This document shows positions 22,042 through 62,740 of a stretch of 64,000 bases of DNA, in pieces. Location of the stretch: assembly GCF_001194135.2 (NCBI RefSeq), contig NC_068988.1, positions 25,488,920-25,552,919 on the forward strand, in the 5' to 3' direction. A program made the translations under genes and the position numbers. Positions within the stretch are counted from its first letter, which is position 1. Every line of letters starts with the position of its first letter. The stretch is from Octopus bimaculoides. Its lineage: Eukaryota. A model generated the notes under the pieces. That model was not told where the DNA came from and ran no database searches. It was given only the letters and a program-made list of their open reading frames with translations.

Positions 22042-22242
22042 CGGTGCGATCTACCGTGTTGAGAACGCATTTTGGTTCTTCTCCACTCCAGGAAAGATCT
22101 CCTTGGCATACTCTCATGAAGACGCCAACTAGATTGTATGAGTCCACACAGGAATACTTGGCTACTGCACCGAATTGGTTGAAAGGAAAGATAACTACTT
22201 TGCCATTGGAAATTTTGGTGTTTATAGCTTTGCATCTGATAT
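22042..22242 (-). CDS. lev-9: Coding exon, Sushi/CCP domain (first CCP of the lev-9/Hasp-like protein)
   Basis: Acceptor ctttttcttttccatttcag| and donor ACC G|gtgagg. It is 201 nt, phase 1-1, and encodes xIRCKAINTKISNGKVVIFPFNQFGAVAKYSCVDSYNLVGVFMRVCQGDLSWSGEEPKCVLNTVDRT, with four CCP cysteines, NG, FG-x-x-A-x-Y-x-C and RVCQGD-x-x-WSG-x-x-P-x-C. It splices in frame to the WAP exon (...CVNK-N-IRC...). Confidence 0.9.
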
Positions 22243-23244
22243 CTGAAATGGAAAAGAAAAAGTAGTTTAAATTTATACTAATAATCTATATAAATGAAAT
22301 ATTAACAGCACAATATAATGGAAAGAACTCTATAGTTTATCATAATAAAGACTATATTGCTTTTAGAGAGCTACGTTCCTTTTGATATGCTAGGTTGTAT
22401 ATCTTTACAGTGATACTGCAGGGAATATCTCTTCAATTTTATATGAAATGGAATCTAAAACTGTAGTTTCGTATATATTTGCTCTTCTGGCGTAGAATCA
22501 ACCTGTTAATAGATCTTGTTCGATTCTGGAGTTGTGTACTATCTCAAGAAAGAAAGTATTTTTACGGCCTATAAGCAGTTATACAAAATAAATAACAAAA
22601 TTCTAACTTTTCATCTCTGAGTAACCATTAAGAATCATACAGAGATATGTGCGTTGTAATGACTGCATCTAAAGAATATTACTGCGTGTTTTTCTGTATG
22701 TATATTAGTAATAGATTTATCAAAGAAGAAAATTGATGTTTTTTTGTACATATATATTTACAAACAAATAACTAACACACATAAAAAGCAACAAAATGGA
22801 AAAAATCAAGTAACTAACATATTTACTCCAAGAATATATTTGATGTGAGCTCCAATCACTGTATAATCGGATTTTTAGAGGATGCTTCATTAAGTTACCC
22901 ACAGGCGAATAGATTATTAAATGTTGATATGAGATACAACTTTTATGTAATACAGTATTTCATATGTATATACAATGTCACTCTCACCAAAACTTCATCT
23001 CTCCTTCTAAAACAGTGTCTATTACGAATATGTAGGGTTTTTGTTTTTTGTTACATTGAAATACTATAATCTCGATTGGATAAGACACTTGGCCGCTTCA
23101 GTTAAATATGATGAGTTGTTACCAAAATATATTAAAAATAATATACTGTTGTCATTTCATATAATTCTCAAATTATTCTGAGATATATGTTTAAGTTAGT
23201 TTTTTAAATATATCCGACAGACATAAGGGCAGAAATTTGGAAGA

Positions 23245-23385
23245 ATCCGTATCACAGCGGCCAAAAGGTTTAGCGTCATTTTGTCTGTCATTGCGTTCAG
23301 AGTTCAACCTCTGCCCAGGTTGGCTTAACAATTTATTCTTTCGGAGACTGTGAAAAAAGTATCACTTGAGCACTTGGAATGACCT
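23245..23385 (+). mobile_element. Degraded SINE family B copy
   Basis: ggtttagcgtcattttgtctgtcattgcgttcagagttcaacctctgcccaggttggc aligns by eye to the 7979 copy. Confidence 0.6.
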
Positions 23386-24134
23386 AAGCGACCTAACATC
23401 TTCCTCGAAATAGGTGGCCTCGCGCCAGAATTTCAAATTTGAAACCAATATATTTCACACACATATAAATAAACACAAGCACACGCATATATATAGATCG
23501 NNNNNNNNNNNNNNNNNNNNNNNNNNNNNNNNNNNNNNNNNNNNNNNNNNNNNNNNNNNNNNNNNNNNNNNNNNNNNNNNNNNNNNNNNNNNNNNNNNNN
23601 NNNNNNNNNNNNNNNNNNNNNNNNNNNNNNNNNNNNNNNNNNNNNNNNNNNNNNNNNNNNNNNNNNNNNNNNNNNNNNNNNNNNNNNNNNNNNNNNNNNN
23701 NNNNNNNNNNNNNNNNNNNNNNNNNNNNNNNNNNNNNNNNNNNNNNNNNNNNNNNNNNNNNNNNNNNNNNNNNNNNNNNNNNNNNNNNNNNNNNNNNNNN
23801 NNNNNNNNNNNNNNNNNNNNNNNNNNNNNNNNNNNNNNNNNNNNNNNNNNNNNNNNNNNNNNNNNNNNNNNNNNNNNNNNNNNNNNNNNNNNNNNNNNNN
23901 NNNNNNNNNNNNNNNNNNNNNNNNNNNNNNNNNNNNNNNNNNNNNNNNNNNNNNNNNNNNNNNNNNNNNNNNNNNNNNNNNNNNNNNNNNNNNNNNNNNN
24001 NNNNNNNNNNNNNNNNNNNNNNNNNNNNNNNNNNNNNNNNNNNNNNNNNNNNNNNNNNNNNNNNNNNNNNNNNNNNNNNNNNNNNNNNNNNNNNNNNNNN
24101 NNNNNNNNNNNNNNNNNNNNNNNNNNNNNNNNNN

Positions 24135-24189
<55 letters not shown>

Positions 24190-24538
24190 CTTATGTATAC
24201 ATTCGTCACTAAAGTCAACAAGGGCTCTAGTCAGCACTAGTATTACTAGAAATAAGAATGAAAACTAGTCAATAGGCACGAAAATACTGACTTTAACCTT
24301 AGACGTCGTCAAAGCTACTGATAAGCGTTGGGATGCGTTGAGCATGAAAAGATGAAACCATGGGTGATCCGGCTCTACCTGCGACCGTAGCTCATTAACA
24401 TAATTACTTTCTAGCTATTGAGTTGTTTTGACGCTTATTTCTTAGAACGCTGGTGCTTGCTGATTAATGCTCTTGTTCACTTCAGTGACGTATATAGTTC
24501 TGTCTTTAGGTTGAAAAATTGGGAATTAGCCTACCATA

Positions 24539-24593
<55 letters not shown>

Positions 24594-25974
24594 TGTATGC
24601 ATGTATGTATATATGTGTGCATGTATATATGTATGTATGTATACATATATAAATAATATATCACAATGTAGCTTGTAAACGTCGATATTTTCACTATAGT
24701 GATGTTTTTGGGGGAGGGTGGGGCTGGTATTATATAAATTTTTTTTAATAGTAATTCTATTTAATACATCAAATTTTAGTTTGTGCGATGAAGTGTTTTC
24801 CTTTATTTTATATAATTTAATGCATTGATGCTTCGTCACTTGTCAGTAGTAGGGGAGATTTTTCTGTGCAGAAAATTTAATAAAAGCCATTAAAACTCCA
24901 CGTCCACACTATTCTAAATGCAAATTATATTTTCTGCAAATTAGTTTTCGCTTTTGATGATGCGCACTTCCAACAAACGTCATTTTGCTTTTATTATATT
25001 AGCAAATTAATGAATAATATCTGTTATTGAAATGTACTAATTTGTAGTTTAAAGCATTTGTATCAACAATATTGACTTATGTTTTCACGGTATGGAGGCA
25101 TCTAGTATTGAGAGATTAGTAGTAATTGAATATTGATATTTATGGAAGGTAAACAAGAATGAAAACTACCGGGTATTCCCGCGCGCAAGTAGTTTGTGAG
25201 TACGCTGAAGCAAAATTTTGAAATGTTAATGTTTAATTTGTGAATACAGTGAAGTGCTAATGGTTCAGCGACTTGAAACACATGCATAGAGGTGTGTGAG
25301 AGAATACACGACAATATATGCGCGTCTACGCCCACACACACACATAGATGCATGAAAAATAATAAGTAGTTCATGAGGCATACACCAGCATGCAAAATAC
25401 AATCGTACTTACAATTAAATGATAATAAAAATATGGATATACATGTGTAGAATTTATTGATTAAAGATGCCAGCAGTTCTGAAGCATTTCGTTCGTGAGG
25501 AATTTCCTTGACTGTAATAACTAATTTCCCGTCAGAGCTTCTCATGCAAAAATCCCCTAAAGTACTCTAAATTTAAAACATCCTGTTCTCTTCCAATCAA
25601 ATCAGCAGTTTGCCTGTGCATTATTGTAAGTTGTCAGCAATTTCTATGCGATAATCAGGCGGTAATGTTCTCATATTTACTAACTTCTTTATTATTATTT
25701 TGTAGGCTAAGAACTTATGTTCTAGGGAAAAGATGCTCAAAGGAATTCAAGGTTAACAAAACATCTGAAGATGGTTAAGCGTAAGTATATTGTATGGAAG
25801 ACTTGTATGGATCTGCTCACTTTTAAATAAACACTTCAAAGTGAAGAAAGCGTTTCGGTCGCAAGAAATTTCTAACAATATTCACAGCACTTAAGTTTGC
25901 TTTCGTTATTTTCTCTTCTGGCATGTGTCTCTGCCGAAATATGTATGTTAATGTCAATATTATTGTTTAATTCT

Positions 25975-26372
25975 TTTTTCTTTTACTTCTTTCAGTCATT
26001 CGACTGTGGCCATGCTAGAATAGCATCTTAAAGAGATTGTAGTCGAAGAAATCGTCCCCGGTACCTATTCTTTGTAAGCGTATTCCTTACTCTATAGGTC
26101 TCTTTTTGCCTAACCACCATGTTACGTATGGGTACTATACACACTAACATTCTTGTCGAGCGATGGCGAACACGGACACAGAGAAATATACACACGCATA
26201 CACACATATACGGTTTTCTTTGGGTTTCCGTCTACGAAATCCACTCATAAGGCTTTGGTCGACCCGAGGCTATAGTTGAAGACAATTGCCCAAGGTTCCA
26301 TGCAGGGGAACTGAACGCAGATCCATGTGACTGAGAAGCAAGCTTCTTCCTACACAGCCATACGTGCATTTA
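25975..26372 (-). mobile_element. SINE family A, near full-length
   Basis: cagtcattcgactgtggccatgct...gtttccgtctacgaaatccactcataaggctttggtcgacccgaggctatagttgaagacaattgcccaaggttccatgcaggggaactgaac...aagcttcttcctacacagcca. The reverse complement includes a CCTTGGGCAA CORE-like motif. Confidence 0.9.
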
Positions 26373-26393
26373 TAATGTAATGGAAAGAGCTCA

Positions 26394-26615
26394 GGGGCCG
26401 AGATGGCAGGATTGTAAGCACGCCGGGCGAAATGTTTATCGTGATTTCGTCCGTCTTCACGTTCTGAGTTCAAACTTCACCGGGGTCGACTTTGCTTTTA
26501 TCCTTTCGGGTGTCGATAAAAAAAAGTACAAGTTGAGTACTGGGGTCCATGTAATGGACAAGCTCCCTCCCCAGAATTCAATGGCCTTCTGCCAAAATTT
26601 GAAATAATATAATAT
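26394..26615 (+). mobile_element. SINE family B, full-length
   Basis: atggcaggattgtaagcacgccgggcgaaatg...gagttcaaacttcaccggggtcgactttgc...ggccttctgccaaaatttgaaat. Confidence 0.9.
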
Positions 26616-29065
26616 CGCAAACTGTCGTACATCGCCTCCGTTTTTCCATTTACTAAAGGATTAATAGAAGCAACACATTAACTAGCCTGTTCTCAACATT
26701 AGAATCCTTTGGCATAGTTAAGTTTCTTGATTTGTAATTGTCATTTTTCCTGATTCTATATTATTTTTCTTTTCCTAACAATGTTGCAGGTTCATATGAG
26801 TGTAGTAGAGATTTGATACTACAGCGTATATGAATCAGCTTAGCTACATTGTCATATCTCCAGGTGCATTATATGCACTACAGAAGTTACATTTGACATA
26901 TATGCTTTAATAATCCAAGATACAATCATCAGGATTTGCACAATTCTGGATCATATGCTACATTTTCTTCGCATTAATTTAACATGTTTGCGACTTACAG
27001 CACTCAGAAAATGAGTTAATCATCTCTATTCTAGTGGGCTATCAGATGACTGGTGCACTATTCTCGCGACTATCTGAGATTATACACAATATGCCGTTGC
27101 ACGATGTGGGGAAGTCGGGAGAACGCAGTTGTTTTTGTGCGTTAGGTAATTCAGTTTGTGTGAAGGTTTCCTTGAAACACCCTCGGCAAATGGTGTTATT
27201 GTAATCAAGAGGATCTAGGTTTTGTGACATGTAACAGGCAGTGTTGATTGGAGGTCCGTTCTAGTTTTATGCCAGCAATATATTTCTGGATTTGGATGGG
27301 AAAATAATTCTCTCGATATTTTTTACTAGAAATTCTCACCAGTCATTCGTGGTTAGTAAATGTATACTACATGGAAATAAATCTACGCCAACATTTTAAA
27401 CAATTACTTCGAACCTATCACATGTTGGATTTTGATGCTGGAGTGATTCCATCATTTGCACATATTTAATTTCGAGGATAGTTATTTTAAATAGGACAGT
27501 GGTGTAAAGAACTACACATCTTGGAAATTCAAATTCAGAGGTTAGTAGTAAATAAACAACTGAATGTTTAAATTAGTAGTGAAAACTTGTCTGTGCCAAT
27601 ATTTTGTTATCAAAATCCGAACGGAAAAGGATTTTCCCGAAAACACACAATACAATCTAAACACATAATGATTTATGATCTGATATGTTTGTATGTGAAA
27701 AGTCATAGCAGGGTTAATGAGACGCCTAGAATCATTTTATAGAAAACTAGCTCCTGAATCAATTCACACAATCATTGTCCTACAAACAATTAGAAAGCAA
27801 TCAGAAAACAATACACTTATTGAGCAGCTGCCATTCAAACACTGAGAAACAATATTATCCATGCAGATATTGTGCAAAACTAAAGCTCGTTAAAATATGA
27901 AGCCGACAATTCTATTGTTGATTAAATGAGAGAAAATTCAGAAGGTTAATATTAAAGGAGGAATTCTTTCACAATTTCTTCTGCTACTAACCACCCCCTC
28001 TCCTCTCTCTCTGCCTAACGAGCTATCAGTCTTTATTGAATATATATGCCCATTGAGATGAACAAAGAATAATGTTGTATTCGTATTTCATGTATGATAT
28101 AAATTGCTCTTAAATTTCCGTAAGTGCTCCCACTCAGTCACGGATATAAAAGTTAGTAGGGAGAGCCTCTCTTAGACGATGGGAATCATCCAAATGAATA
28201 TGGAACTAATCAACAACAACAAGAAACACAACATCTCAGTTGCAGTTTGAATAGCGATCCAATACTATTTACGAAATAGCTTAAGTGACCTTTAAAACAG
28301 TTTTGGTTAAAATTACATTTTATTCGAAACTTATCACTAGTATATAATTTACCTTTAAACGAGATATATCTCATATTCTACATGAATAGAATAAATTAAA
28401 TGAAATATAATGAATTGGTTCATTATTCTCAGACAAAACTAGATAAGGAACATTCTCCTCTCTGACAGCAACATATTGTGTGAAGAAAAAACAATGAGGC
28501 CAAATATTAGAGACAAACCGATGACGCTAATCAAATTCGTAATTTCACATCTGCGGCGTTAGCAATGCTATGAATCAAAGAAAAGAACGAGTAATGAATA
28601 AGAAAGTACAGAACTAGATAAGTACTGTAAAATAACAGCTGTTTATTTATTTATCGAACGGCATCAGCTTCTCTAATCCCTTTTCTTGTACTTTAACATT
28701 GCCTTCTGTTTTAGGAAGTTATTAAATCTTGCAATATATTATTACCCTCTTTTTGATTAAATAACATTTAAAGTGATTTAATTCATTTGTGCAATAAACA
28801 ATTCAGCGAAATATTCACTTATGATTTATTTCTTCAAAATGGTATTCTTCTACAGAGGACGCTGTCAACACAGCTTATCAGCACATGCGTACTGATTATT
28901 CTCAGCAAATTTCAATTGCATCCGTTTTACATTTATGCATGTATGTATGTATATGTGTATGTGTTTATGTGTGTATGTATGTATGTGGATGTTTATGCGA
29001 GTGTGTATGTATTTCTTTGTGCGCGCGTGTAGGGTGTGTGTATGTGTGTGTGTGTGTGTGTGTGG

Positions 29066-29124
<59 letters not shown>

Positions 29125-29242
29125 GATACATATGTCGGTTCTTATTGTATTCAACGATATTTAAAAGGAAATACTTCATTTGAATTCTAATATTGTGTTT
29201 AAAATTTTCCGAAATCGATACCATAATTTCATGGTGCAAAAA

Positions 29243-29298
29243 GTCACTCACTTTGTTTCATGAATAAACGTCACTCACTTTGTTTCATGAATAAACGT
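29243..29298. repeat. Perfect 27-bp tandem duplication
   Basis: gtcactcactttgtttcatgaataaac x2. Confidence 0.95.
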
Positions 29299-29872
29299 TT
29301 AAAAATTTCTCTTTTCCTAAAATTTATTTGATAGGAAAGGATAAATCATGTATAGTCTTATGTCTCCTGGTGGGAGCCATTTTAATTATATTTGATTTTA
29401 TATGAAATATGCATATATCAAACAAAATATTTTCTCAATCGAAGGTGAGGAAAAGCAATATGTGTTCAATATTAATCGATAACATATCCATGATATTTCT
29501 CGCAATATCATGCAGTCAATATCCAGACTAACTGGTCGATCCGACTTTTTCTCTTCTCTGAAATTTATTGTACTGCCTGAGGAAGAGCCAAGCCTGAAAC
29601 GTCCTATTTTCACTAATAATTTTCCATATAAAACTTTCATCGAGCGTCAAACTAATACATTCCTTAAATATGAAGGGTTATAATCTTTTTGTTATAATGG
29701 TAAAATAGTCAGATGTGCTTCTATAGCGTATACTATCGTCAGGCTTCGACAATATCGTTGGATATAAGATATGTAAATCTACTGATTCTGAACAGATTAG
29801 TTCATGATCAACACAAAGGAGAAGCAGAGTTGCAGAGCAAATAATCTTAATAGCAATATTAATATGAATACG

Positions 29873-30095
29873 AAGGCAGCGAGCTGGCAGGATCGTTAGC
29901 ACGCCTGGCGAAATGCTTAGCGGCATTTTGTCCGTCTGAAGGATCATAGTTGGAATTCCGCCGAGGTTGATTTTGTTATTCATCTTTTCAGAGGTTGATA
30001 ATATAAGTACCAGTCGAGCACTGAAATCGATGTAATCGATTTAACCTCAACCACGAAATTGCTGACGCTATGCCAGAAATTGAAATCAATATTAA
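29873..30095 (+). mobile_element. SINE family B, full-length
   Basis: ggcagcgagctggcaggatcgttagcacgcctggcgaaatgcttagcggcattttgtccgtc...aagtaccagtcgagcactg. Confidence 0.9.
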
Positions 30096-31904
30096 CATTA
30101 CGAGGAAAGAACATTAACTCGTTGCTTAGTAGTATATTTATCATTTCGGCAAAAGGCAACAGAGGACATCTTTCGATTTTACTAATATTCTACAGCAATG
30201 AGTATACATTACCGTGCTACGCTAGATAGTGTGAGGTTATTACCGAATAGTTTACATTAGATATGAATGCCAGTAACAAAGTAACGATCCACTAGGATGA
30301 CAGCATACCAAGCTTGTTATGTGAAAATTCAAAGAAGAAATATACCAAAGTAGAAATAGATAATAAAAAGATTTTTCTGCGTATAATATTTCACCTGCCT
30401 CATTCTAATTCCATAACCGAATACTATAAATCAAATTAATTATAGATGCATATGTTATGGACGTATTCTAAGCACGCTGCGATATAAAGATAATTTAAAT
30501 CTATAGAGAACACTGTCATCTAGTAAAAAATATTAATAACAACGAAAATATAAATATAAGTAAAAAGATTAAACATATGGCAATGCCTAACGAAAACAAA
30601 CAAACACTTGAAGCATAAATCATTAATTAAGTGTTACAGTAATTATTCACCTAGGGTTTGTTTGAAGACTGTGTACTTAATATACACTAATAATACTCAT
30701 TGGAATGGCTTATGCATAATATTTATTTTTTACCGCTCCATGCTAATGTAAAGACAATACAGTTATTTAATTAACCAAAGTTGGAATGCAGCTAGAAGCC
30801 TCATGTTATGTCCTGATATATTACTTCAAATTAATATAAAGAGGAATGCGTATGTTTTTGTTTTCTTTATTATTTCATGCAATCAGACTCTTGCATACAT
30901 TACTGTTATCAGGTATAAAATAACTAGTTAGTATTTTCACGTTCTCTTTTCAACATGTCGGCATAAACAGAACGGTTGAAAAAAAAACAAAAAAACATTA
31001 TTGCTCTACTGGTTACATTATTGTATTAAATTAATTTTGTCTCTTAAATATAACAAATCAATAATTTATTCTTTTGACCAAACAACTGATCAATATTATA
31101 TTACCTGTCAAATTGTTAATATATTACTCCACTTTATACAATTTTCTGACAAGCTAAAAATACAGCTGCTTTATTACTGCATCATCTATAGCTTTCAGGT
31201 GAATAGCACATGATTGAGTGTATAAACCAAAATAGACTAAAATCATTGAAAACAATTAAAGTCACAAATTAGGGAAGTTAGAAACCGCAGATTCAACAAA
31301 TATAACTGAAATAGTAGCTTCAACCATCATGATATAATCCTTCTTCCATCGTTTTTCAGCTGGAAGTGAGTGTCAGTTTCCACTGTTCCTAATGTTAAAA
31401 AGAGAATAACTGGGATGATTGAACCACAAGTGTTAGCGGTTAGGTTCATGAAATGGTTTAACCCAGAAATCAGGCCATCGGCTTAGAAGAAAAGAGAAAG
31501 GAATTAATCACTACTAATCAAATTAATATAATTCGATTTGTTTTTCATCGTAATATCTAGATTTTAATGTAATAATATCATTCCTTGTACCAAAGGCACA
31601 ATAACTGTGCATAAATTGCCTACAAAGATTTTTTATGGCTTTCGATCATCATGCATTTGATTTGAACTTAATTTTCAGACATCTATAGCTGTTCTAAAAG
31701 CAGGGCTTACAAACTTTTTGTGCCCTTACCCCACATGCTCTCTTACACTTGGAAAGGAAAAATTACGTTATAGAATTTTTAATGTAATAAAATGTGATGT
31801 TACTTTGGTATCAGCTGTAAAAGATAAAGTGACAGGGGTATGTATGTATGTATGTATGTATGTCTACACATAGACACATATTCACATGTGTGCATACATC
31901 CTTA

Positions 31905-31956
<52 letters not shown>

Positions 31957-32591: not shown

Positions 32592-32631
<40 letters not shown>

Positions 32632-32639
32632 ACAATTAT

Positions 32640-32865
32640 TACAAATTAAAAGCGTAAAGGTTTATCAATTTATTAATTTATTAATAAATCAACAATTAAT
32701 AATTTTTACCAAGCCCTTCGGTATGTAAGCACCATTATAGGTGGAGAACTTATTTAAAAGTTCATTTAAAACTGTATTCCATATTCCCGAGCGTCATACT
32801 AATACATCCTTTTGTTATTTACACCACCTGTCCGCGTCTGTTGTTGTTTTTTCGTATATTCTCCC
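32640..32865 (-). mobile_element. PLE-like terminal (pLTR-like) sequence in reverse orientation upstream of the RT remnant
   Basis: 32783-32865 is the reverse complement of a copy at 50247-50330. The minus strand also has ccac-ctataat-ggt-gcttacat-acc-gaag-ggctt-gg (decayed hammerhead-like) followed by AATAAA-rich sequence. Confidence 0.5.
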
Positions 32866-32889
32866 GTGTAGATATATATATATATATAT

Positions 32890-54236: not shown

Positions 54237-54410
54237 TAGGCGCAGGCATGCATATATAGTCAAGTGTTTCGCATTGCAGCAATGTCGTTTCTGGTTCACT
54301 CTCACTTGAGCTGCTGTATTCTATTATTACTCCGTGTTGATCAAAGACTTGTGAGGCAGTTTGGGAAACGGAAACTGTGCTGAAGCCCACTGTATGTCAA
54401 CATGATGTAT
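54237..54410 (+). mobile_element. Degraded SINE family A 5' part
   Basis: taggcgcaggcatg...gatcaaagacttgtgaggcagtttgggaaacggaaactgtgctgaagcccactgtat, followed by a TA/CA microsatellite as in other copies. Confidence 0.7.
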
Positions 54411-55609
54411 ATATATATATGCGTACACATATATATGTATTCATACATACATATATAAACACACATACGTACACACACACACACATATATGCATATGTAT
54501 ATATGTATATGTGTATTTGTGTACATAGATATCTGCCATTATCTGCAACACTCCACTACTACCTTCATTATTACATGCCAGATTTGCTTGCGACATGCTT
54601 GAAAGATATATGGGGCAATTGCCAGTAATAGTAATTTGGCGCATTTCTAGTGGTGTGAGCTGTTGCGTTGTCATGTCACAGTGCAGAGAAAATCATACAT
54701 GATGATCAATTTCAACTGGAATGACAAGACCGCTATGATTATGTGCCCATAACAAGATTGTAAAACGTTGGAAAGGGCTCAATTACCTTTGATAAGTTTC
54801 TTAGTCAAAGGTTTCTGGGATTTGTGCAAATAACCGAATTGCGCTAATTAGACTCCCCCCTGCTTTCAAGTTCTCTATTTACCGATATTTTATAATTAGA
54901 TGTTGTTTTTGCTCTCTTTGATTTCATTTTCCTCTACCAACACGCCTGGTCGTCTTTACTTCATTTTTATACTGTCCCTAATGCCGTAGGTGCTTGTGGT
55001 GGATCAGAAAATTTCTAATAATTACATATATTATGACGATTTATGATTAGGAATATTTCTTATTGATTTTTTTTATACCTGCTATTTTGATCACTGTTCC
55101 TGCATTTTGAATTTCTATTTTTTGCAGAAAATATTTCGCCTCTTTAATAGAAAAATCGTTCATTATTTTCATCTATTGTTCTCTCATATCACAAGAGATT
55201 TATTGAATCTGTTCTCATTTTCTGCGCAGCCTTTTCCAAACATAATTGTCTTATTTTATAATACATTTTGACTCTAAAATCCTAGTCTCCTTTCGTCACT
55301 TTGCAAGATAGTTTCTATAAATGACAATTAAAGTATTATATTTTAAATGCTATTTTAAATTAACCATTCTTTCTAGCAATATTAGAGAATCTTCTCTCAT
55401 TGTTGAATCCATAATTAGGGTGATTTGTAAAATAAACACTTAACAACCAATTCACGTTCCATTAATTGATTGTGGCTTTGTTGAGTTGAACATATTTGTA
55501 CACAAGCATGACTCTATATTCAAGTGGAATTGTAGTCTTAAATTTCAAAGGGCAGTAAAAAAAAAAGAGATGAAAGAACCTTCCCGATTTCCCCAGATTC
55601 TGTGGCATA

Positions 55610-55750
55610 TACTCTCAGCCCCGTCCGCCCGAGACGAGACGCCGATCCGTTGTAAGATTACTCATTTTTGCTATTGAGTAGACTGGATCAGCATAAAATT
55701 ATGTGTTTTGCTCAAGAACAAAACGCGGCGCTGGGTCGAGGATCCGAAAC
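55610..55750 (-). mobile_element. Third SINE family (C) fragment
   Basis: gacgagacgccgatccgttgtaagattactcatttttgctattgagtagactggatcagc...gtgttttgctcaagaacaaaacgc. The reverse complement has a CORE-like gttcttgagcaaaacac. Confidence 0.6.
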
Positions 55751-55929
55751 GATAATGTTATTATGATTGTTGTTACTATTGGAGTTACTATTGTTATTCG
55801 AAAGCTAATCGACAATGTGTGTAACACCATAAACACTTAGCCACGCGTCTCCTTATATTTCAATAGAATTGAAGAATTACTGTTATTATTATGAGGCACA
55901 AACTAATTGATAATATTACTATTGTTAGG

Positions 55930-56150
55930 AAAGCGGTGAGATGGCAAAACTATTAGCACGCCGGGGAGAATGCTTAGCGGCATTTCGTCCGTCTTTACGT
56001 TCCAATGTTAAATGCTGCTGCGCTCCACTTTACCTTTCATTCCTTTGGCTTGGATAAAATAAGTACCAGTTGAGAACTGAGTTCGATTTAATCGACTTAG
56101 CTCCACCCCGAAATTGCTGGTCTTGTACTAAAAATGTTAACCAATATTAC
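55930..56150 (+). mobile_element. SINE family B, full-length
   Basis: gcggtgagatggcaaaactattagcacgccggggagaatgcttagcggcatttcgtccgtctttacgttcc...aataagtaccagttgag. Confidence 0.9.
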
Positions 56151-56167
56151 TGTTTTTAGGTTGTGTT

Positions 56168-56271
56168 CTTATTAGTGTTGAAGTTTCTACGTACCTTATT
56201 AGTGTTGAAGTTTCTACGTACCTTATTAGTGTTGAAGTTTCTACGTACCTTATTAGTGTTGAAGTTTCTAC
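56168..56271. repeat. 27-bp minisatellite, 3 perfect units plus a 23-bp partial unit
   Basis: cttattagtgttgaagtttctacgtac repeated. Confidence 0.97.
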
Positions 56272-56914
56272 ACAAGCAAGACTCGACGCAAATCAACAAA
56301 ATATTTTGTACATGGTCGTTTGGTTTCTCAAAACACAAGTCAAATTTGGGTAATTTTGAAATGGAAAAAGGTACGATATTGAGGTGATTATATACTCTAG
56401 GAACTATGTAGATATTCATAAATGAACCCAATATTCTAGTGATATAATTCTGGTAGCAAATTTCGAGATGAGTGAGAATGTCCACAGCGCATGTAACTAC
56501 GTTCGAGTCTTATTTATTGGAGCTCCAAACCGAAGCAGAAACCAAACGACTCAACCATGCGCTTCCAGTTATATAGTAGCTCTAGCGCTGAACTCTCTAT
56601 TTAAGTACTGGTTAGCAACGATAGCTATCTGTTTATTAAGGAAATTGTGAAATATCAGGAAGATAAAAAGTTTGTGCAACACAAATATATCACTTGCTCC
56701 CGAAGTAATTGTTACCGCTCTCAAAGTGTTACCAAAGACGATGGAGGATATTAAAATTTCGTAACTTATTGTAAACCAGCAGAGAAGTGCCCATCTGTAT
56801 TCTGCAATAATCTTAAGAAAGAATCTTGAATTTTGCAAACGCTTACTGCTACAAAACCTAGGGATAGCAATAGCATCCCATCACAGTAAATTAGTATATA
56901 ATTGCTTTTGAGCA

Positions 56915-57066
56915 ATAATAGCAAAAACAATAGAAACAACGACGTCAATGATAATAATAACAATAATGATAATAGCAAGAAGAAGACGAAGAAGAAAAAG
57001 AAGAAGAAGAAGAACAACAACAACAACAACAACAACAACGACGACGACGACGACGACGATGACGAC
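56915..57066. repeat. Compound trinucleotide array (AAT)(AAG)(AAC)(GAC)
   Basis: Directly visible; the source of the N/K/D-run ORF at 56902. Confidence 0.95.
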
Positions 57067-57099
57067 ATACTAGCTGAACTAATGAATAAGCTTTCTAAA

Positions 57100-60060
57100 C
57101 GAAAAATTAATAGCAGAAGATGAAAGAGAATATCTAAAAGAAGTAACGGTAGCCTAAACACAGGAATAATTAAAATATTGATAATGTAATTTTCAACTGT
57201 AGAAATAACACGTGCAATAGAAATGATAAACAACGAAATACTATAAATTCAAACCCTGGAATTCTAAAATATTGAACGCAAAACGACAAACAAAAACTGC
57301 AGAAAATGTAAATAAAGTTACGTAAGAGAAAGATCTTAATATGAAAAAATTCTAAAGGTGAACATCATGACTTTAACACTCCAAAACTGTATTATATCGC
57401 AATTGAGAGCATTCGATCCTCCTATTGGCCAATGGAAGTATCCTACATGGTTAAATAGCAACAGTATTACATCGAACCATGAAACAGCAACAATAATAAA
57501 AGAAACGTGAACTTGGTTGTCGCAAATTTAATTAAAAAAAGTTCATCCATTGTCGTGAAATAATATATCTATCAGTCACTGTTGTTACAAAGTAAAATTA
57601 GTACTCTCTCAAATCCATTCACAGAATAAAATTAAAACCCATGAAAAATGAAATATCCAGAAATATATAGAAAAGGAGATACATTTGTCAATTTTTAAAA
57701 TCAATAATGAAACGAGAAGACTAAAAAGGTACACAAAGTGATAAATGTTAAAATAATATGTACCTGAGATCAAAGATCTCACTAGGTCGATAAAATTCAG
57801 TTATTATGAAAAGCACAAAAGATTATTTGAATAAAAGCTGTTCGACTCAAAATCTAAACGATTCAATGAAGAAGTTTGTAAAAAAAAAAAATCAATATAC
57901 AGTACTAAAAGCACCAGAAATAGAAGTCTGAGGGAGAAGTATAGGCAGAAAAAGAATTCTAACAGAAAAGATTTAAAAAACAAAATGAATGAATGAATGA
58001 ATATTGCTTTGGGACAATCTTAGGTGTCCATAACAACGGAAAGATTAACCCCAGTACTGCAAACAACTGGATTTAATCGAACCATGAAAGTATCAAAAGT
58101 TTCTGGACAAAATATTTAAAAGAAACACAGAAGTTGCTAGTAGATAAGTACAATGTGATACTGGTGGTACCAGAGAAAACAATGCTAGGATATAAAATAC
58201 AAACAAAAATACCCAACTATATACAAATTTCATCCCCAAATCTACATAAAATCTCATAACATGTCTTTTTAAAACTTACAAAAACCTTAACTGCAATAAT
58301 ATCGCAGAAGATAAGATATCTGGTAAAAAAAACAAAATGGATGCTGCAAAAGTTCATGGTGTAATGATAAATTACTGATTCAGAAAGCTATGACCGAAGG
58401 CAATAGAAGCACTTGGTATGGTATAGACTGACTACAAGAAGGTTTTGATAGTATTACTCCCACATGGATCCCGGAGGTAAAGTCATGAAAAATGCAGCTC
58501 CAGTAAAATGAAAGTACATGGAACATGACTGGGATTTACAGTTAAAGGAAGGAGTTTTAAAAGCTAAACGCATTCCTATTAGAAGAGTAATATCCCAGAA
58601 GGAATCTATCTCACTGTTTCTTATTCGTCTGGCGCTGGTACCTTTTGGTCGTTATGCTAAACAGAACTGCATGTGGATACAACAATTATGATAAGGCGAT
58701 TAACAAGCTTTCGTATGTGAATGATCCCAAGTTGAATGTTGCAAATGATAAGCAAGTCAACGCATTCTTGCAGACAACAAACAGTTTTCTCACAGAAAAA
58801 AACATGAGAATAGCTCAGAAAAAATGTGCCAAAGAATTATCTGACAAGAAGAAAAGTAATTAAAACACTAATATCATATGAGATAAAGGGAATGAAATAA
58901 GAGAATTAGACCGAACTTATGAATCAATGAACAAGACAGTATAACACCACACGCAATTTGGGAGAAAAGATTACAAAGGAATATTATAGAAGCACCAGAT
59001 TATTTCCTAAAAGTGGGTTAAATGAAGAAGAATAAGGCAACAGACATCAATACTCTAGGTGTGCCTGAAATAAGTTACTTATTTAATATTCTCAATTGTA
59101 CGCTTATCGAACTGTCTAGACTAGACAGGAAAATAGGGGAAATAATGATAGCATTTAGAATAGGCCATGCAAAATGGAAAGACTATATTTACCACGAATA
59201 TAAAGAATTTGGTGACTTGTGTAACTAGAAAACTAATACAAAATATCCACAATAAAAATAACTATTCTGAATCATGGACATTTATATAAACAGCTATGAA
59301 ACATGAACAAAGCATAAAATTACTTTTCATCTTCAAAGAAGACGTCAACTACAAAACATGTTGCAATAGCAAATAACTATAAAGAAAATAGTGAAAGCGT
59401 AACTGAAAGCATGGAGTGCTAAAAATCTAAACTAAAGTCCTGGTTAGAAAATGATAGATAGATAATAAGAAATCCCATACAAGACTAATACCAGAAGATG
59501 CTGCAAACAGAAGCAATGAAAATAGAATAGCTATCACTAACTTGGAAGTGCCGGATTCAAAGCAGATGCATAATATTTATGTACTGTGGAGGAAATACTC
59601 CCACAATAGAAACTATGAAAACTACGTAATGTAGCAGAATATAGTAAAAGCAGAATACTTAGAGAGTGGAAGAAACAATTGATCACATTATTTCTGATTA
59701 CTCAGAGTACAACCAAACGTACACCCGAATTGAGAGTTACATACACTAGAAGATATGCCAGCTGTATGAAAAACCAATAGGGCAAAGATGGTATAATTAT
59801 GCATAACAAGAGATCGGTGAAAATGGCAAAGCAACTCTATACGGAAATATACCAATATTCAAAGACAGCGAGATCAAGGTAGTCAGACCGGAGACTGTTC
59901 CTGAGCACCACAAAATAACGAAATGCCTCCTAATCAACAAATTAATTCCAAAAGGTGATAATATATCTTTTGGAGAAATGGAAGAAATATCTAAATATAA
60001 AAAATAACCCGAATGATGAGCTTGAAAACAGAAACTATCCCTATAATGATAGGGATCTGA
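57100..60060 (+). mobile_element. Heavily decayed R4/Dong-type RLE non-LTR retrotransposon
   Basis: Frameshifted RT motifs TYKxLTAIISQKI, GCCKSSWCNDKLLIQK (~58339), TDYKK..FDSI..TWI, IPIRRVISQKESISL (decayed RGIFQGDSLSP) and INKLSYVNDPKL (decayed YMDDLKL). The RLE region reads EETIDHIIS...WYN...RPETV...SKYK (~59670-60000). The 5' boundary is approximate. Confidence 0.8.
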
Positions 60061-60231
60061 GAATTGCCAAAACTATGCTTACAAATACACACCTAATAGC
60101 CCAGTACTCGTACATCAATACATTCATATTTACATACATACATATATATATACACACGTACACACACACGCATACACGCACTCACACACACACGCACGCA
60201 CGAACACACACACACACACACACACACACAT

Positions 60232-60361
60232 AGCTTCCTCCCATGAAATGTCAATGGTTTTGAGGTCGTCGATGAAGGTGCGGCGCCAAGTCGCTTTTGG
60301 TCGCCCTTGTTTTCTCTTGCCATGCGGTGGCTTCCACAGAATGGTGGTTTTCGCATGCCAC
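60232..60361 (-). mobile_element. RTE-clade LINE 3' ORF fragment
   Basis: WHAKTTILWKPPHGKRKQGRPKATWRRTFIDDLKTIDISWEEA matches the W.P.GKR..GRPK.TW...DL C-terminal motif typical of RTE elements. Confidence 0.75.
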
Positions 60362-60915
60362 GACGCTGTGGAAAGAGTGCGGAAAATGTGACCCAATTGC
60401 TAAGTCGATGTGAGAGCCTTGCACAAAAAGAGTACAAGCGCCGTCACGATGCAATGTGTGTGTATCTTCATTGGATCTTATGCTGTAAATACCAATATGA
60501 AGTAAGAGAGAACTGGTATGAGCATGTATCAAGTAAAGTTATGCAGTAGGACGGGAAAGTAACGACACTCTGGGACTATGATATTCAGACGGATTGTGTA
60601 ATCGAACACCGTGGACCAGATATTATCATATTGAATAAGAGACATACTGTAATATCATTGATGTTGCCATAGAAAATGACATGAATGGTGTGAGTAAAGT
60701 GAGTGGATAAATCACCATTTACTCCGAATGGAAAGTGGAAATGGCAAGACTGTATGGAATGTAAAAGAGTAATGTAAAAGTGATACAGTGGTGATCGGAG
60801 CGTTGGGCTCAATCGCATTGAAACTTCAATAAGTCTTTAGGCAACTGGAAATCCTATGCAAGATTAATGTCTTGCAAAAAACGACGCACGTCTTAAGGAA
60901 AGAAGTATCTGTCTG
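60362..60915 (+). mobile_element. Second R4/Dong-type fragment (CCHC-like zinc knuckle plus RLE endonuclease)
   Basis: RRCGKSAENVTQLLSRCESLAQKEYKRRHD...WYEHV...LWDYDIQTDCVIEHRGPDIII...IIDVAI...VVIGALG...LQKT, with stops and frameshifts. Confidence 0.85.
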
Positions 60916-60919
60916 AGAT

Positions 60920-61082
60920 CCTTGTTCCGCCATCTTAACTGATTGGAACTGTAATTATGTACATTGTTATGTAAGGGTATAAAAGATGGGCTGCAGCAAA
61001 TATACTGCTCAATACACAGATTTGTCAGTTACTTGACCTTCACTAGTTGAGCATGTCCCTTAATGGCTGGCGATATGTGCAT
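60920..61082. repeat. Fragment of another interspersed repeat
   Basis: catcttaactgattggaac...aaagatgggctgcagcaaatat...gagcatgtcccttaatggctggcgatatgtgcatc resembles a common Octopus repeat as I recall it. There is only one copy in the window, so this is unverified. Confidence 0.4.
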
Positions 61083-61097
61083 CATAATAATAATAAT

Positions 61098-61155
<58 letters not shown>
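61083..61155. repeat. (ATA)n microsatellite
   Basis: Directly visible. Confidence 0.95.
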
Positions 61156-62010
61156 GTGATTCTTAAAATTCGACACGCTTACAAAAGTTTGAGGAGTGAA
61201 CTTAGTCGAAAACATTGTTTGGTACTATATTTTAAGAATGAGAGTGATTAGAGGGCGAAATACAATTATAAAGATTCCTAAGAAACGTATAAAAGCATTT
61301 CCTACGACGCTGTAACGAGTGTGCCAGCTTACTACCCTTAATTGTTTATGAATTAAACAGAGGGCCAGCAAAAGTTAAGTGAAGTTTATTGGTCGACTTA
61401 ATCACAGGTTTCAGAGCGCTGAAATACAAAGTTGAATTCAATTTAACTTAAAGTCAGAGCATAAAAAATTAGATCATATACCAGAGGATATCCCTTCCGG
61501 CTCTTTAATGTTTCTGCCATAACTCGGTCTCTTCTATTCATTATAATTATAATAATAATGAAGATAGCTATATTTAGTAAAGTTCTTCACACAATATATA
61601 GCGGTTTGTTATGTATAGCTCATGACCTCATTGTACTCATCATAACATAAAAGCGAAAATATATTGTTTTTTAATGACAATCGAAAATAGATCCCAGAGT
61701 CGTCTCACTGAAATAGTTTGTCTGAGTCTCAAGAAACTACCAGATGATATTAGAATCTTCAAAGCAAACAGCGATGTGCCCTGTTCTTATCTATAATAAA
61801 GAATGCTTCTTAGACGAAAATGAAATTAATTCTAGGCATACATAAACAATTTCTCCTTTTTCTCATAAAATCCTAACGATAAATGGCGCAACAAAGGAGT
61901 TGCAACATGGTTTGAAAGGAAATAAAATTGTGCTGGAATCACGAACACAGAGGGAACATGTGTCTTTTGAAGATATTCCATAAATATGTACACATACACA
62001 CACGCATATA

Positions 62011-62084
<74 letters not shown>

Positions 62085-62599
62085 CGTTTATGATGATGTA
62101 TGCAAATCGTCCATGAATTATATGATTAGCTCGTACGTAATAATATAACAGATATGATAAAAAAATTATCGACGCATTTGTTCAAAATGTCAGCTATAAA
62201 AGTATGTTATTTTGCAATAGTGTTTAGAAAACTCCAGCATTCGTGTGTGTGAGACAGAGTGTGTCTATAAGTATGTATGTTTATAGCTACGTATATTGTA
62301 CTATAAATATTCGCAAGGAGAGTTCCCTTAAAATTTATTTTATGCACTCGTTGCTTAATTCTTAAGAAGTTTGGGAAAGTAACCACACTAATGTATTATT
62401 GGTAGTGAACTCCCCAAAGAATAAATAATACTAGACGCTCAAAAAAAAATTCCTGTAAAAGTGCTAATAACATAAAACATAAATGTACATGCATTTTTTT
62501 TTTTTTTTTTGCATAATATAAAATCAAATTGAAATAAATACTATTTCTGTGTTAATATCACATAGAAATAGATTGAATCAAAATTGCATTTCTACTTAC

Positions 62600-62740
62600 T
62601 TTTATTTACACAGCTCATACCACACTGGCCGTCACATAAACATTTTTTCTTCCTGCTTACGCAATCTTCGTGAGTTTCACATCTCTTCAGGCAAGTTCGG
62701 TTTATAACATTCTCCTCTCTTGGACACGAATCTTCACTGG
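62600..62740 (-). CDS. lev-9: Coding exon, WAP-type (8-Cys, LEV-9-like CxC variant) domain of a lev-9/Hasp-like secreted protein
   Basis: Reverse complement has acceptor ctttttcttttcatctttatag| and donor AAA A|gtaagt. It is 141 nt, phase 1-1, and encodes xSEDSCPREENVINRTCLKRCETHEDCVSRKKKCLCDGQCGMSCVNK (8 Cys). The CLCDGxCGMSC motif is typical of LEV-9-family WAP domains (recalled family knowledge; orthology not tested). Confidence 0.85.

What the first reader, a model, noticed from the sequence alone, without database searches (positions are those of the whole stretch)
22042..62740. Hidden LEV-9/Hasp-like WAP+CCP gene on the minus strand
Seen: two phase-1 exons with strong splice sites join in frame into WAP(CxC variant)-CCP; neither is in the ORF track. 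Established: C. elegans LEV-9 (WAP plus multiple CCP) clusters acetylcholine receptors at the neuromuscular junction, and Drosophila Hasp (WAP plus CCP) organizes cholinergic synaptic-cleft matrix. Inference: this may be a cephalopod cholinergic-synapse organizer, a role I am not aware of having been tested in molluscs.
Basis: partly seen in the sequence, partly recalled or inferred. Interest (0 to 1): 0.7.

Follow-up and report, generated by a model that had tools for sequence, protein, structure and literature searches.

The report
Octopus lev-9 gene, first coding exons
The two exons are real and belong to the 5' end of the Octopus bimaculoides lev-9 gene, a secreted WAP-plus-CCP protein related to insect Hasp; public annotation already names this gene, so the only new point is that the public protein models cut off its signal peptide and most of its WAP domain.

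Summary
Observation confirmed. On the minus strand, exon A (62740-62600, WAP with a CxC spacing) and exon B (22242-22042, one CCP/Sushi domain) have AG/GT splice sites, are both phase 1, and join in frame. All six assembly gaps lie in the 40,357-nt intron and none touches an exon or splice site. The joined peptide is 100% identical to the N-termini of six RefSeq 'protein lev-9' isoforms of Octopus bimaculoides (XP_052825947-953). The older 81-aa 'SRPX-like' model also uses this junction, and so does an uninterrupted 3.1-kb transcript contig from a related species.

Family assignment supported. Full-length relatives have a signal peptide, WAP and about 9 CCPs. They align colinearly with insect Hasp (32% identity, E 4e-98), and the tree follows the species tree. 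The 'CxCDGxCG' WAP is invariant from cnidarians to arthropods.

It is not hidden or new, because RefSeq already calls it lev-9 in O. bimaculoides, O. sinensis, O. vulgaris, Argonauta and many other molluscs. The window holds only 2 exons of a gene spanning at least 351 kb.

One refinement: the O. bimaculoides models start at an internal Met (62618-62616) and omit the signal peptide and 40 residues of WAP, which this window shows are intact and under coding constraint.

The role at cholinergic synapses is inference only. I found no cephalopod literature on it.

The parts
62600..62740 (-). WAP exon of lev-9 (141 nt, phase 1 to phase 1). It encodes (A)SEDSCPREENVINRTCLKRCETHEDCVSRKKKCLCDGQCGMSCVNK(N), with eight Cys and the C5-x-C6 'CLCDG' variant.
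   Evidence: Sequence read. Pfam WAP scores 23.5 bits against a cut-off of 20.8. It is 45/46 identical to the O. sinensis lev-9 WAP. Against a related transcript, 23 codons are identical, 14 synonymous and 9 non-synonymous. All 8 Cys plus D36 and G40 are invariant in 31 family members.
62741..62742 (-). Splice acceptor AG of the WAP exon, preceded by a long polypyrimidine tract.
   Evidence: Read upstream in the exon's frame, there is no ATG before an in-frame TGA 42 nt upstream. The exon therefore needs an upstream signal-peptide exon, which is not found in 62741-64000.
62616..62618 (-). Internal ATG (Met41 of the WAP exon peptide). It is used as the start codon by all six O. bimaculoides RefSeq lev-9 models and by the old 81-aa model.
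   Evidence: The proteins begin MSCVNKNIRCK.... Coordinates were read.
62598..62599 (-). Splice donor GT (context A|GTAAGT) of the WAP exon.
22243..62599 (-). Intron of 40,357 nt between the WAP and CCP1 exons. It contains six assembly gaps (2,439 N), microsatellites and decayed retroelement fragments. No further lev-9 coding exon was detected in it.
   Evidence: Gap list. Motif scans and tblastn with P0053 and O. sinensis lev-9 find nothing else.
22243..22244 (-). Splice acceptor AG of the CCP1 exon.
22042..22242 (-). CCP1 (Sushi) exon of lev-9 (201 nt, phase 1 to phase 1). It encodes (N)IRCKAINTKISNGKVVIFPFNQFGAVAKYSCVDSYNLVGVFMRVCQGDLSWSGEEPKCVLNTVDRT(E/V).
   Evidence: Pfam Sushi at E 9.2e-10. 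It is 100% identical to XP_052825947-953 and XP_014782940.1, and 62/67 identical to O. sinensis. It is the only stretch conserved with a second cephalopod contig, at 75% nucleotide identity.
22040..22041 (-). Splice donor GT (context G|GTGAGG) of the CCP1 exon. It is joined to alternative downstream acceptors outside the window. The old 81-aa model read through it, giving the tail ...GEDIFSFN*.
   Evidence: The isoforms continue ...VDRT|EKNQCGDPP or ...VDRT|VVCNQPP in O. bimaculoides, and ...VDGT|DAKFNM in O. sinensis.

Best explanation
The finding is the 5' coding end of the Octopus bimaculoides lev-9 gene. The WAP exon (62740-62600) is spliced across a 40.4-kb intron to the first CCP exon (22242-22042).

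The complete product is seen in the O. sinensis orthologue and in a related transcript. It is a secreted protein of about 650-770 aa with a signal peptide, one N-terminal WAP domain carrying the family-specific CxCDGxCG spacing, and about nine CCP/Sushi repeats. It has many CCP-cassette splice isoforms.

It belongs to an ancient metazoan WAP-CCP orthogroup. Its insect member is Hasp (Hig-anchoring scaffold protein), and annotation pipelines name its mollusc members after C. elegans LEV-9.

- Shown here: exon structure, junction, identity with the annotated gene, domain content, and family placement.
- Inferred only: by analogy with LEV-9 and Hasp, the protein is deposited in the synaptic cleft, where its CCP array scaffolds nicotinic acetylcholine receptors. 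I put about 0.4 on that function. The 0.9 below refers to the identity and architecture claim.
For: - **Sequence and splice sites:**
- **Domains:** Pfam WAP and Sushi both score above their cut-offs.
- **Identity with the annotated gene:** the peptide is 100% identical to O. bimaculoides RefSeq 'protein lev-9' X1-X6 across the junction and to the older XP_014782940.1.
- **O. sinensis orthologue:** it has a full N-terminus, MLALLTRRRIMTSKFTLVLLLYITLRNIQHTLA|SEDSCPRE..., with the WAP 45/46 and CCP1 62/67 identical.
- **Transcript support:** contig SRR8281679_47972 (3,125 nt, one uninterrupted 689-aa ORF) carries signal peptide, WAP and 9 Sushi with the same 'SCVNK|NIRCK' junction.
- **Coding constraint on the WAP exon:** 14 synonymous versus 9 non-synonymous codon changes, and third-position differences of 18 versus 9 and 6 at positions one and two.
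- **Named homologues:** lev-9 or lev-9-like in more than 15 molluscs, and Hasp or hig-anchoring scaffold protein in Hymenoptera at E 1e-98 to 1e-108.
- **Colinearity with Hasp:** a 553-aa alignment at 32% identity with bee Hasp, plus a separate alignment that includes the WAP.
- **WAP signature:** the eight WAP Cys plus D and G are invariant in 31 sequences from cnidarians, amphioxus, nematodes, arthropods, annelids and molluscs.
- **Tree:** the neighbour-joining tree mirrors the species tree.
- **Gene size:** the coding range is 351,471 bp on the chromosome assembly, so a 40-kb intron is unremarkable.
Against: - The window itself contains neither a signal-peptide exon nor CCP2 onwards, so architecture beyond WAP-CCP1 rests on orthologues and RefSeq models.
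- C. elegans LEV-9 and D. melanogaster Hasp were not retrieved, so the link to the two functionally studied proteins goes through automated names and hymenopteran proxies.
- The nematode members recovered are about 1,350 aa, not the eight-CCP size the review gives for LEV-9. One-to-one orthology with LEV-9 proper is therefore untested.
- Foldseek did not significantly confirm a WAP fold for the predicted model.
- There is no expression or localisation data for cephalopods. The only mollusc mention found is ovary-biased expression of a gene named lev-9 in abalone.
Confidence: 0.9

Rival explanations
1. The RefSeq reading is correct. In O. bimaculoides the WAP exon is mostly 5' UTR, translation starts at the internal Met (62618-62616), and the protein lacks both the signal peptide and the WAP domain.
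For: All six current RefSeq isoforms, the old model and Argonauta lev-9 X5 start at MSCVNK. No signal-peptide exon is visible in the 1.26 kb of window upstream of the WAP exon.
Against: - The 40 codons upstream of that Met are open back to the acceptor and 39/40 identical to O. sinensis, where they are preceded by a signal-peptide exon.
- Across the whole 46-codon exon, changes against a related transcript are mostly synonymous.
- All eight WAP Cys are invariant family-wide.
- A disulfide-rich CCP protein without a signal peptide could not fold in the cytosol (established knowledge).
- The same truncated start in several models fits a pipeline that fails to find a small first exon across a huge intron.
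Confidence: 0.05
2. The exons belong to an unrelated WAP or CCP protein and the LEV-9/Hasp resemblance is only domain-level. Candidates are SRPX-like as first annotated, SVEP1/CSMD-like as some isoforms are named, a complement regulator, or a WAP protease inhibitor.
For: The old model is named 'SRPX-like'. Some O. sinensis isoforms of the same gene are auto-named SVEP1 or CSMD1. A profile search against PDB hits only complement CCP proteins. CCP repeats match thousands of proteins.
Against: - Pfam finds Sushi as the only domain with matched stretches in full-length proteins of the family, plus WAP where the full N-terminus is modelled. It finds no HYR, CUB, VWA, EGF or pentraxin domains.
- Homology to Hasp-named proteins is colinear and extends through family-specific motifs up to the C-terminal '...GQHP'.
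- The WAP signature CxCDGxCGxSC followed directly by a CCP is shared across the family.
- The tree follows the species tree.
Confidence: 0.03
3. It is a true family member, but in cephalopods it acts mainly outside cholinergic synapses. Possible roles are a general extracellular-matrix, reproductive or immune CCP protein, or a WAP-type protease inhibitor.
For: A gene named lev-9 is among the top ovary-upregulated genes in abalone. The review reports that the WAP domain is dispensable for LEV-9's receptor-clustering role, which leaves its conserved function unexplained. Cephalopods carry two paralogues that could have diverged in function.
Against: In the two studied animals (worm LEV-9, fly Hasp), the WAP-CCP proteins localise to cholinergic synapses (review PMC9083331). 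Strong conservation of the whole CCP array from insects to molluscs suggests a conserved binding role. No octopus expression data were available either way.
Confidence: 0.35

Closest known systems
Octopus bimaculoides 'protein lev-9' isoforms X1-X6 (RefSeq XP_052825947.1-XP_052825953.1, assembly GCA_001194135.2)
   Same: It is the same gene. The CCP1 exon and the last six residues of the WAP exon are 100% identical, and the models use the same 62600->22242 junction.
   Different: The RefSeq proteins start at the internal Met 'MSCVNK'. They lack the signal peptide and the first 40 residues of the WAP domain, which the window encodes intact.
Octopus sinensis 'protein lev-9' (e.g. XP_029640261.1, XP_036361162.1; isoforms numbered up to X15)
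   Same: It is the orthologue. The WAP is 45/46 and CCP1 62/67 identical, with the same junction and the same phase-1 continuation after CCP1.
   Different: It has the complete N-terminus with a signal peptide. It is a different species. Some isoforms are auto-named SVEP1 or CSMD1.
Insect Hasp (Hig-anchoring scaffold protein). Drosophila Hasp organises the cholinergic synaptic cleft; it is represented here by Chelonus insularis and Halictus rubicundus proteins so named.
   Same: Both have an N-terminal WAP with CxCDGxCGMSC followed directly by CCPs. The alignment is colinear at 32-35% identity over about 550 aa (E 4e-98; E 1e-98 to 1e-108). In the family tree Hasp is the arthropod counterpart.
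   Different: Hasp proteins are longer, about 1,100-1,600 aa, with a long C-terminal extension beyond the part that aligns with octopus. The review gives Drosophila Hasp up to 17 CCPs. The D. melanogaster protein itself was not compared.
C. elegans LEV-9 (WAP plus 8 CCP; clusters levamisole-sensitive AChRs at the neuromuscular junction)
   Same: Both have a signal peptide, a single WAP and a tandem CCP array of similar size (8 versus about 9 CCPs). Automated pipelines name the mollusc proteins after it.
   Different: It was not retrieved in any search, so no direct alignment was made. The nematode family members that were recovered are about 1,350 aa. One-to-one orthology and any shared partners (LEV-10, OIG-4) are untested.
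Octopod 'lev-9-like' paralogue (XP_052827228.1 in O. bimaculoides; XP_029641001.1 in O. sinensis)
   Same: It has the same architecture and about 60% identity. It is sister to the lev-9 clade within cephalopods.
   Different: It lies on a different chromosome-scale contig, and its CCP1 sequence is clearly different (…RCRGDDLKILNGNVDIVPYNRFGAMAKYTC…). It is not the gene in this window.
Vertebrate SRPX/SRPX2 (the name first attached to this locus)
   Same: It contains Sushi repeats. The review describes SRPX2 as having a synaptic role.
   Different: No WAP domain is part of the SRPX architecture (my knowledge), and the HYR domain of SRPX (my knowledge) does not appear in the octopus protein. The name came from a single-CCP fragment.

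Membership tests
LEV-9/Hasp family (secreted WAP + tandem CCP synaptic-cleft scaffolds) | Single N-terminal WAP (four-disulfide core) domain | tested here: met
   The window peptide scores 23.5 bits on Pfam WAP against a cut-off of 20.8. The same domain passes in relatives P0053, P0206 and P0295. All eight Cys are invariant in 31 family members.
LEV-9/Hasp family (secreted WAP + tandem CCP synaptic-cleft scaffolds) | WAP followed directly by a tandem array of CCP/Sushi repeats and no other domain type | tested here: met
   The WAP-CCP1 junction lies in the window. Full-length O. bimaculoides, O. sinensis and related transcript proteins show 9 Sushi stretches, and no other family has a matched stretch of its own. 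CCP2 onwards lies outside the window.
LEV-9/Hasp family (secreted WAP + tandem CCP synaptic-cleft scaffolds) | N-terminal signal peptide (secreted protein) | tested here: inconclusive
   It is not in the window. A hydrophobic leader is present in the O. sinensis orthologue (MLALLTRRRIMTSKFTLVLLLYITL...) and in transcript P0053 (MTAKLSLAIILYIAL...). The O. bimaculoides exon is presumably upstream of position 64000 or in the gap at 62905-62978.
LEV-9/Hasp family (secreted WAP + tandem CCP synaptic-cleft scaffolds) | Sequence orthology to insect Hasp | tested here: met
   The alignment with Halictus 'hig-anchoring scaffold protein' is colinear at 32% identity over 553 aa, E 4e-98. Hasp-named proteins score E 1e-98 to 1e-108. 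The tree is congruent with the species tree. This was done with hymenopteran proxies, not D. melanogaster Hasp itself.
LEV-9/Hasp family (secreted WAP + tandem CCP synaptic-cleft scaffolds) | Sequence orthology to C. elegans LEV-9 (reciprocal best hit) | not testable with these tools
The only Caenorhabditis hit, P0234, shows no WAP match, carries long non-CCP regions and aligns over only 27% of the query, so it is not a LEV-9-type protein. Support is indirect: RefSeq and UniProt automated names read 'protein lev-9'.
LEV-9/Hasp family (secreted WAP + tandem CCP synaptic-cleft scaffolds) | Localisation to cholinergic synapses and a requirement for nAChR clustering or Hig anchoring | not testable with these tools
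   This needs expression, imaging and loss-of-function experiments. No cephalopod literature was found.
Canonical WAP four-disulfide core (elafin/SLPI type) | Eight Cys with an adjacent C5-C6 doublet (…C-x5-C-C-x3-C-x3-C) | tested here: not met
   Eight Cys are present, but C5 and C6 are separated by one residue (KKKC-L-CDGQCGMSC) and the C4-C5 spacing is six residues. This CxC form is invariant across the whole WAP-CCP family, so it is a family variant and not damage. The AF2 model has mean pLDDT 84, but the Foldseek match to omwaprin is not significant at E 3.1.
SRPX/SRPX2 (name of the old model) | Sushi repeats combined with a HYR domain and a C-terminal DUF4174; no WAP | tested here: not met
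   Pfam on the full-length O. bimaculoides and O. sinensis proteins finds Sushi as the only family with matched stretches, and no HYR. A WAP is present in the window. The defining architecture is taken from my knowledge of SRPX.
SVEP1 / CSMD (names given to some isoforms) | VWA, EGF and pentraxin domains (SVEP1), or alternating CUB-Sushi units (CSMD) | tested here: not met
   Neither P0165 nor P0340 has a VWA, pentraxin or CUB hit. There is only a short cEGF match barely above threshold, with no matched stretch of its own, lying inside a CCP.

The most novel reading that the evidence does not exclude
The octopus LEV-9/Hasp orthologue, together with its cephalopod-specific paralogue, is the extracellular scaffold that clusters nicotinic receptors at cephalopod cholinergic synapses, including arm neuromuscular junctions. 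Its many CCP-cassette splice isoforms (numbered up to X15 in O. sinensis, with alternative acceptors used right after the CCP1 exon in this window) would tailor that scaffold to different synapse types. That would extend the LEV-9/Hasp mechanism from Ecdysozoa to Lophotrochozoa and suggest it was present in the bilaterian ancestor.
Probability: 0.35. Interest if true: 0.55.

Novelty: already known. Interest (0 to 1): 0.2.

Why it matters
As a discovery it matters little, because the gene is already in RefSeq as 'protein lev-9' for this species and its relatives. Two modest points remain.

1. **Annotation fix.** The O. bimaculoides lev-9 models, and also one Argonauta lev-9 model and one O. sinensis 'lev-9-like' model, start at an internal Met. 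They omit the signal peptide and most of the WAP domain. Anyone using them would wrongly score the protein as non-secreted and WAP-less.

2. **Conservation.** The WAP-CCP family, with its invariant CxCDGxCG WAP variant, runs from cnidarians to arthropods and molluscs, yet it has been studied functionally only in a nematode and a fly. Cephalopods have large cholinergic systems, so they would be a reasonable place to test whether the receptor-clustering role is ancestral. That is a research suggestion and not a result.

Tried and rejected
- **Spliced peptide as a query.** As a workaround I built a two-row pseudo-alignment, but only the 81 CCP-side columns became profile positions. It was rescued by a local phmmer run with the WAP exon against those 150 hits, which picked out P0053.
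- **First word-indexed search.** The 113-aa peptide found only 3 fragments.
- **More lev-9 exons in the window.** Cys-motif scans and sensitive tblastn with P0053 and O. sinensis lev-9 found none besides the two.
- **Signal-peptide exon in 62741-64000.** None was found. The apparent 'FFILLFLFLFIFIA' match is the polypyrimidine tract read in frame, closed by a TGA with no ATG.
- **Comparison with a second cephalopod genomic contig (L001).** Only the CCP1 exon is conserved. P0159 turned out to be a downstream CCP exon and not the WAP exon.
- **C. elegans LEV-9 and D. melanogaster Hasp.** Neither was recovered by the single-sequence search or the 28-sequence profile search. The one Caenorhabditis hit (P0234) is not a LEV-9-type protein.
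- **Nakayama 2016.** The paper is not held in the library.
- **WAP fold check.** The AF2 model is reasonable (pLDDT 84), but the Foldseek PDB matches are all non-significant. The PDB profile search returns only complement CCP proteins.
- **tRNA and Rfam scans of the window.** Both were empty.
- **Pfam on long intronic ORFs.** Only sub-threshold transposon-like hits appeared.
- **P0001 look-up.** The protein is not on record by exact sequence.

Full report
**1. What is in the sequence**

The minus strand carries two short exons.

- Exon A runs from 62740 to 62600 (141 nt). A long polypyrimidine tract and AG precede it, and GTAAGT follows it.
- Exon B runs from 22242 to 22042 (201 nt). '...ttttcttttccatttcAG' precedes it, and GTGAGG follows it.
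- Both are phase 1 at each end, so they join in frame. The peptide is SEDSCPREENVINRTCLKRCETHEDCVSRKKKCLCDGQCGMSCVNK-N-IRCKAIN...EEPKCVLNTVDRT.

Pfam recognises both domains above their curated cut-offs. The WAP domain scores 23.5 bits (cut-off 20.8) and the Sushi/CCP domain scores 39.2 bits (cut-off 20.7).

**2. The assembly gaps**

The six N runs named by the scan program (2,439 N in total) all lie inside the 40,357-nt intron (22243-62599).

- No exon or splice site contains or abuts an N. The gap nearest exon B is 1,259 nt away.
- Continuity of frame across the gaps is therefore not at issue.
- The real questions are whether the two exons belong together and whether a hidden exon lies between them. 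Both are answered by independent sequences (section 3).
- A further 74-N gap at 62905-62978 sits 165 nt upstream of exon A. I cannot exclude that it hides the upstream exon.

**3. The junction is real and already annotated**

- The first homology search returned XP_014782940.1, an 81-aa Octopus bimaculoides model named 'SRPX-like'. It reads MSCVNK|NIRCKAIN...VDRTGEDIFSFN. It starts at the Met inside exon A, uses the 62600->22242 junction, and reads through the donor at 22042.
- Cluster look-ups then showed that the current RefSeq annotation of the chromosome-level O. bimaculoides assembly calls this gene 'protein lev-9', isoforms X1-X6 (XP_052825947-953). Every isoform begins MSCVNKNIRCKAIN... 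and is 100% identical to the window across the junction.
- The coding range of isoform X1 spans 351,471 bp. The window therefore holds only the 5' ~40 kb of the gene.
- A Logan contig from sequencing run SRR8281679 is 3,125 nt long and has one uninterrupted 689-aa ORF, so it is a spliced transcript. It encodes signal peptide, WAP and nine Sushi repeats with the same 'SCVNK|NIRCK' junction.
- In an ENA contig from a closely related source (a 49-aa exon product there clusters at ≥90% identity with that transcript's protein), the CCP1 exon and a later CCP exon of this gene lie 369 kb apart. Giant introns are normal for this gene.

**4. What the window does not contain**

Sensitive tblastn with the related transcript protein and with O. 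sinensis lev-9, plus Cys-motif scans, find no other lev-9 exon anywhere in the 64 kb.

- Upstream of exon A's acceptor the frame closes at a TGA 42 nt away with no ATG. An upstream signal-peptide exon is therefore required, and it lies beyond position 64000 or in the 74-N gap.
- After CCP1 the isoforms continue with different exons. O. bimaculoides has ...VDRT|EKNQCGDPP or ...VDRT|VVCNQPP, and O. sinensis also has ...|DAKFNM. All are compatible with the phase-1 'G' left at 22042.

**5. A refinement of the public models**

O. sinensis orthologues carry MLALLTRRRIMTSKFTLVLLLYITLRNIQHTLA|SEDSCPREENVINRTCLKRCETHEDCVSRKKKCLCDGKCGMSCVNK. That is a signal peptide followed by a WAP that is 45/46 identical to the window.

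The six O. bimaculoides models lack those residues because they start at Met 62618-62616. One Argonauta lev-9 model (isoform X5) and one O. sinensis lev-9-like model also start at the equivalent internal Met. Three lines of evidence show the unannotated part is coding:

- The frame is open back to the acceptor.
- Against the related transcript, the 46 codons split into 23 identical, 14 synonymous and 9 non-synonymous. Third-position differences number 18, against 9 and 6 at the first and second positions.
- All eight Cys, D36 and G40 are invariant in 31 family members.

A CCP protein without a leader peptide is also implausible. The truncated start is most likely an annotation artefact caused by a small first exon beyond a huge intron.

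**6. Which family**

A search with the full-length relative P0053 gave the following:

- Top named hits are 'protein lev-9' or 'lev-9-like' from octopods, Patella, Haliotis, Pomacea, Biomphalaria, Mytilus and other molluscs.
- They are followed by annelid proteins and by hymenopteran 'Hasp' / 'hig-anchoring scaffold protein' at 33-35% identity (E 1e-98 to 1e-108).

Further evidence supports the placement:

- A 28-sequence profile added arthropod, nematode (~1,350 aa), amphioxus and cnidarian members.
- Local scans show that nearly all of them begin with the same WAP signature, K/R-K-K-C-x-C-D-G-x-C-G-x-S-C, followed directly by a CCP.
- O. sinensis lev-9 aligns colinearly with a bee Hasp over 553 residues (32% identity, E 4e-98), up to the octopus C-terminal '...GQHP'. 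A second alignment includes the WAP.
- A neighbour-joining tree on 542 well-occupied columns reproduces the species tree: cnidarians, amphioxus, molluscs plus annelids, arthropods plus nematodes. It shows a cephalopod-specific duplication into lev-9 (this gene) and lev-9-like, which lies on another chromosome.
- Pfam finds no HYR, CUB, VWA or pentraxin domains in the full-length proteins. The alternative automated names (SRPX-like, SVEP1, CSMD1) are artefacts of best-hit naming.

**7. Limits of the family test**

- The link to the two functionally studied proteins therefore rests on automated names and on hymenopteran Hasp orthologues.
- The nematode members I recovered are about twice as long as would fit the eight-CCP architecture the review gives for LEV-9. 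One-to-one orthology with LEV-9 proper is open.
- A structural check of the WAP variant was inconclusive. The AF2 model has pLDDT 84, but the best WAP match (omwaprin) has Foldseek E 3.1.

**8. How it most likely works**

*Shown:* the window holds two exons of a secreted-type WAP-plus-multi-CCP gene.

*Inferred from the review PMC9083331:*

- LEV-9 is secreted by muscle and localises to cholinergic neuromuscular junctions. It is needed to cluster levamisole-sensitive AChRs through its CCP domains, and its WAP domain is dispensable for that role.
- Hasp sits in cholinergic synaptic clefts in the fly brain and anchors Hig, whose localisation is interdependent with AChRs.

By homology the octopus protein is most plausibly a synaptic-cleft scaffold of this kind. 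I put that at roughly 0.4, because nothing here tests it. I found no paper mentioning lev-9 together with octopus or cephalopods. The only mollusc mention is ovary-biased expression of a gene named lev-9 in abalone.

**9. Verdict**

- The gene is already known to public annotation in this very species, so novelty is 'already known' and interest is low.
- The useful residue is the N-terminal correction of the O. bimaculoides models, and the note that the WAP-CCP family and its CxC WAP variant are conserved across Metazoa but untested outside Ecdysozoa.

Noticed in passing
window 62616-62738 (-): All six current RefSeq O. bimaculoides lev-9 proteins start at the internal Met 62618-62616. One Argonauta hians lev-9 model (isoform X5) and one O. 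sinensis lev-9-like model (XP_029641001.1) likewise begin at the equivalent internal Met. These models therefore lack the signal peptide and 40 residues of WAP that are intact and conserved here.
   Followed up: yes
window 22040-22042 (-), donor of the CCP1 exon: This one donor is joined to at least three different downstream exons in octopod isoforms: ...T|EKNQCGDPP, ...T|VVCNQPP and ...T|DAKFNMVVC. O. sinensis isoforms of this gene are numbered up to X15, which indicates extensive CCP-cassette alternative splicing.
   Followed up: partly
outside the window: O. bimaculoides XP_052827228.1 and O. sinensis XP_029641001.1: Octopods carry a second 'lev-9-like' paralogue on a different chromosome-scale contig. 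In the neighbour-joining tree the duplication is cephalopod-specific. Several other lophotrochozoans (Liolophura, Solemya, Paralvinella, Physella) also show two copies.
   Followed up: partly
window 33142-34133 (+): Two adjacent open frames look like a decayed Penelope-like retroelement inside the intron. One has a YVDD reverse-transcriptase-like motif. The other has a weak GIY-YIG hit (E 0.005, below the Pfam cut-off).
   Followed up: partly
window 46586-47089 (-): A 168-aa open frame has a weak endonuclease/reverse-transcriptase (Exo_endo_phos_2) match at E 0.009, below the cut-off. It is probably a LINE fragment in the intron.
   Followed up: partly
window 21424-21647 (both strands): A stretch just downstream of the CCP1 exon matches several places in the other cephalopod contig L001 by tblastx (41-46% identity). 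It looks like an interspersed repeat shared between cephalopods and not an exon.
   Followed up: no
window-wide, e.g. 6853-7301, 9489-9874, 14581-15196, 28825-29257, 38697-38927, 60044-60443: The window is AT-rich (32.5% GC), with 12 assembly gaps and many microsatellites of TG/CA, TA and trinucleotide type. These produce spurious Cys-rich or low-complexity open frames. No tRNA or Rfam family was found in the whole window.
   Followed up: yes
L001 and L002 (ENA ERZ21867824 contig ctg123284l): In a second cephalopod-like assembly, the CCP1 exon and a mid-gene CCP exon of the orthologous gene lie about 369 kb apart on one contig. Prokaryote-style gene calling had turned each exon into a small stand-alone 'protein' (P0002, P0159).
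   Followed up: partly
family alignment A3 (not in the window): The nematode members of the WAP-CCP family recovered here (Mesorhabditis, Halicephalobus, Setaria) are about 1,325-1,360 aa, roughly twice what the eight-CCP architecture the review gives for C. elegans LEV-9 would suggest. How LEV-9 relates to them is unclear.
   Followed up: no
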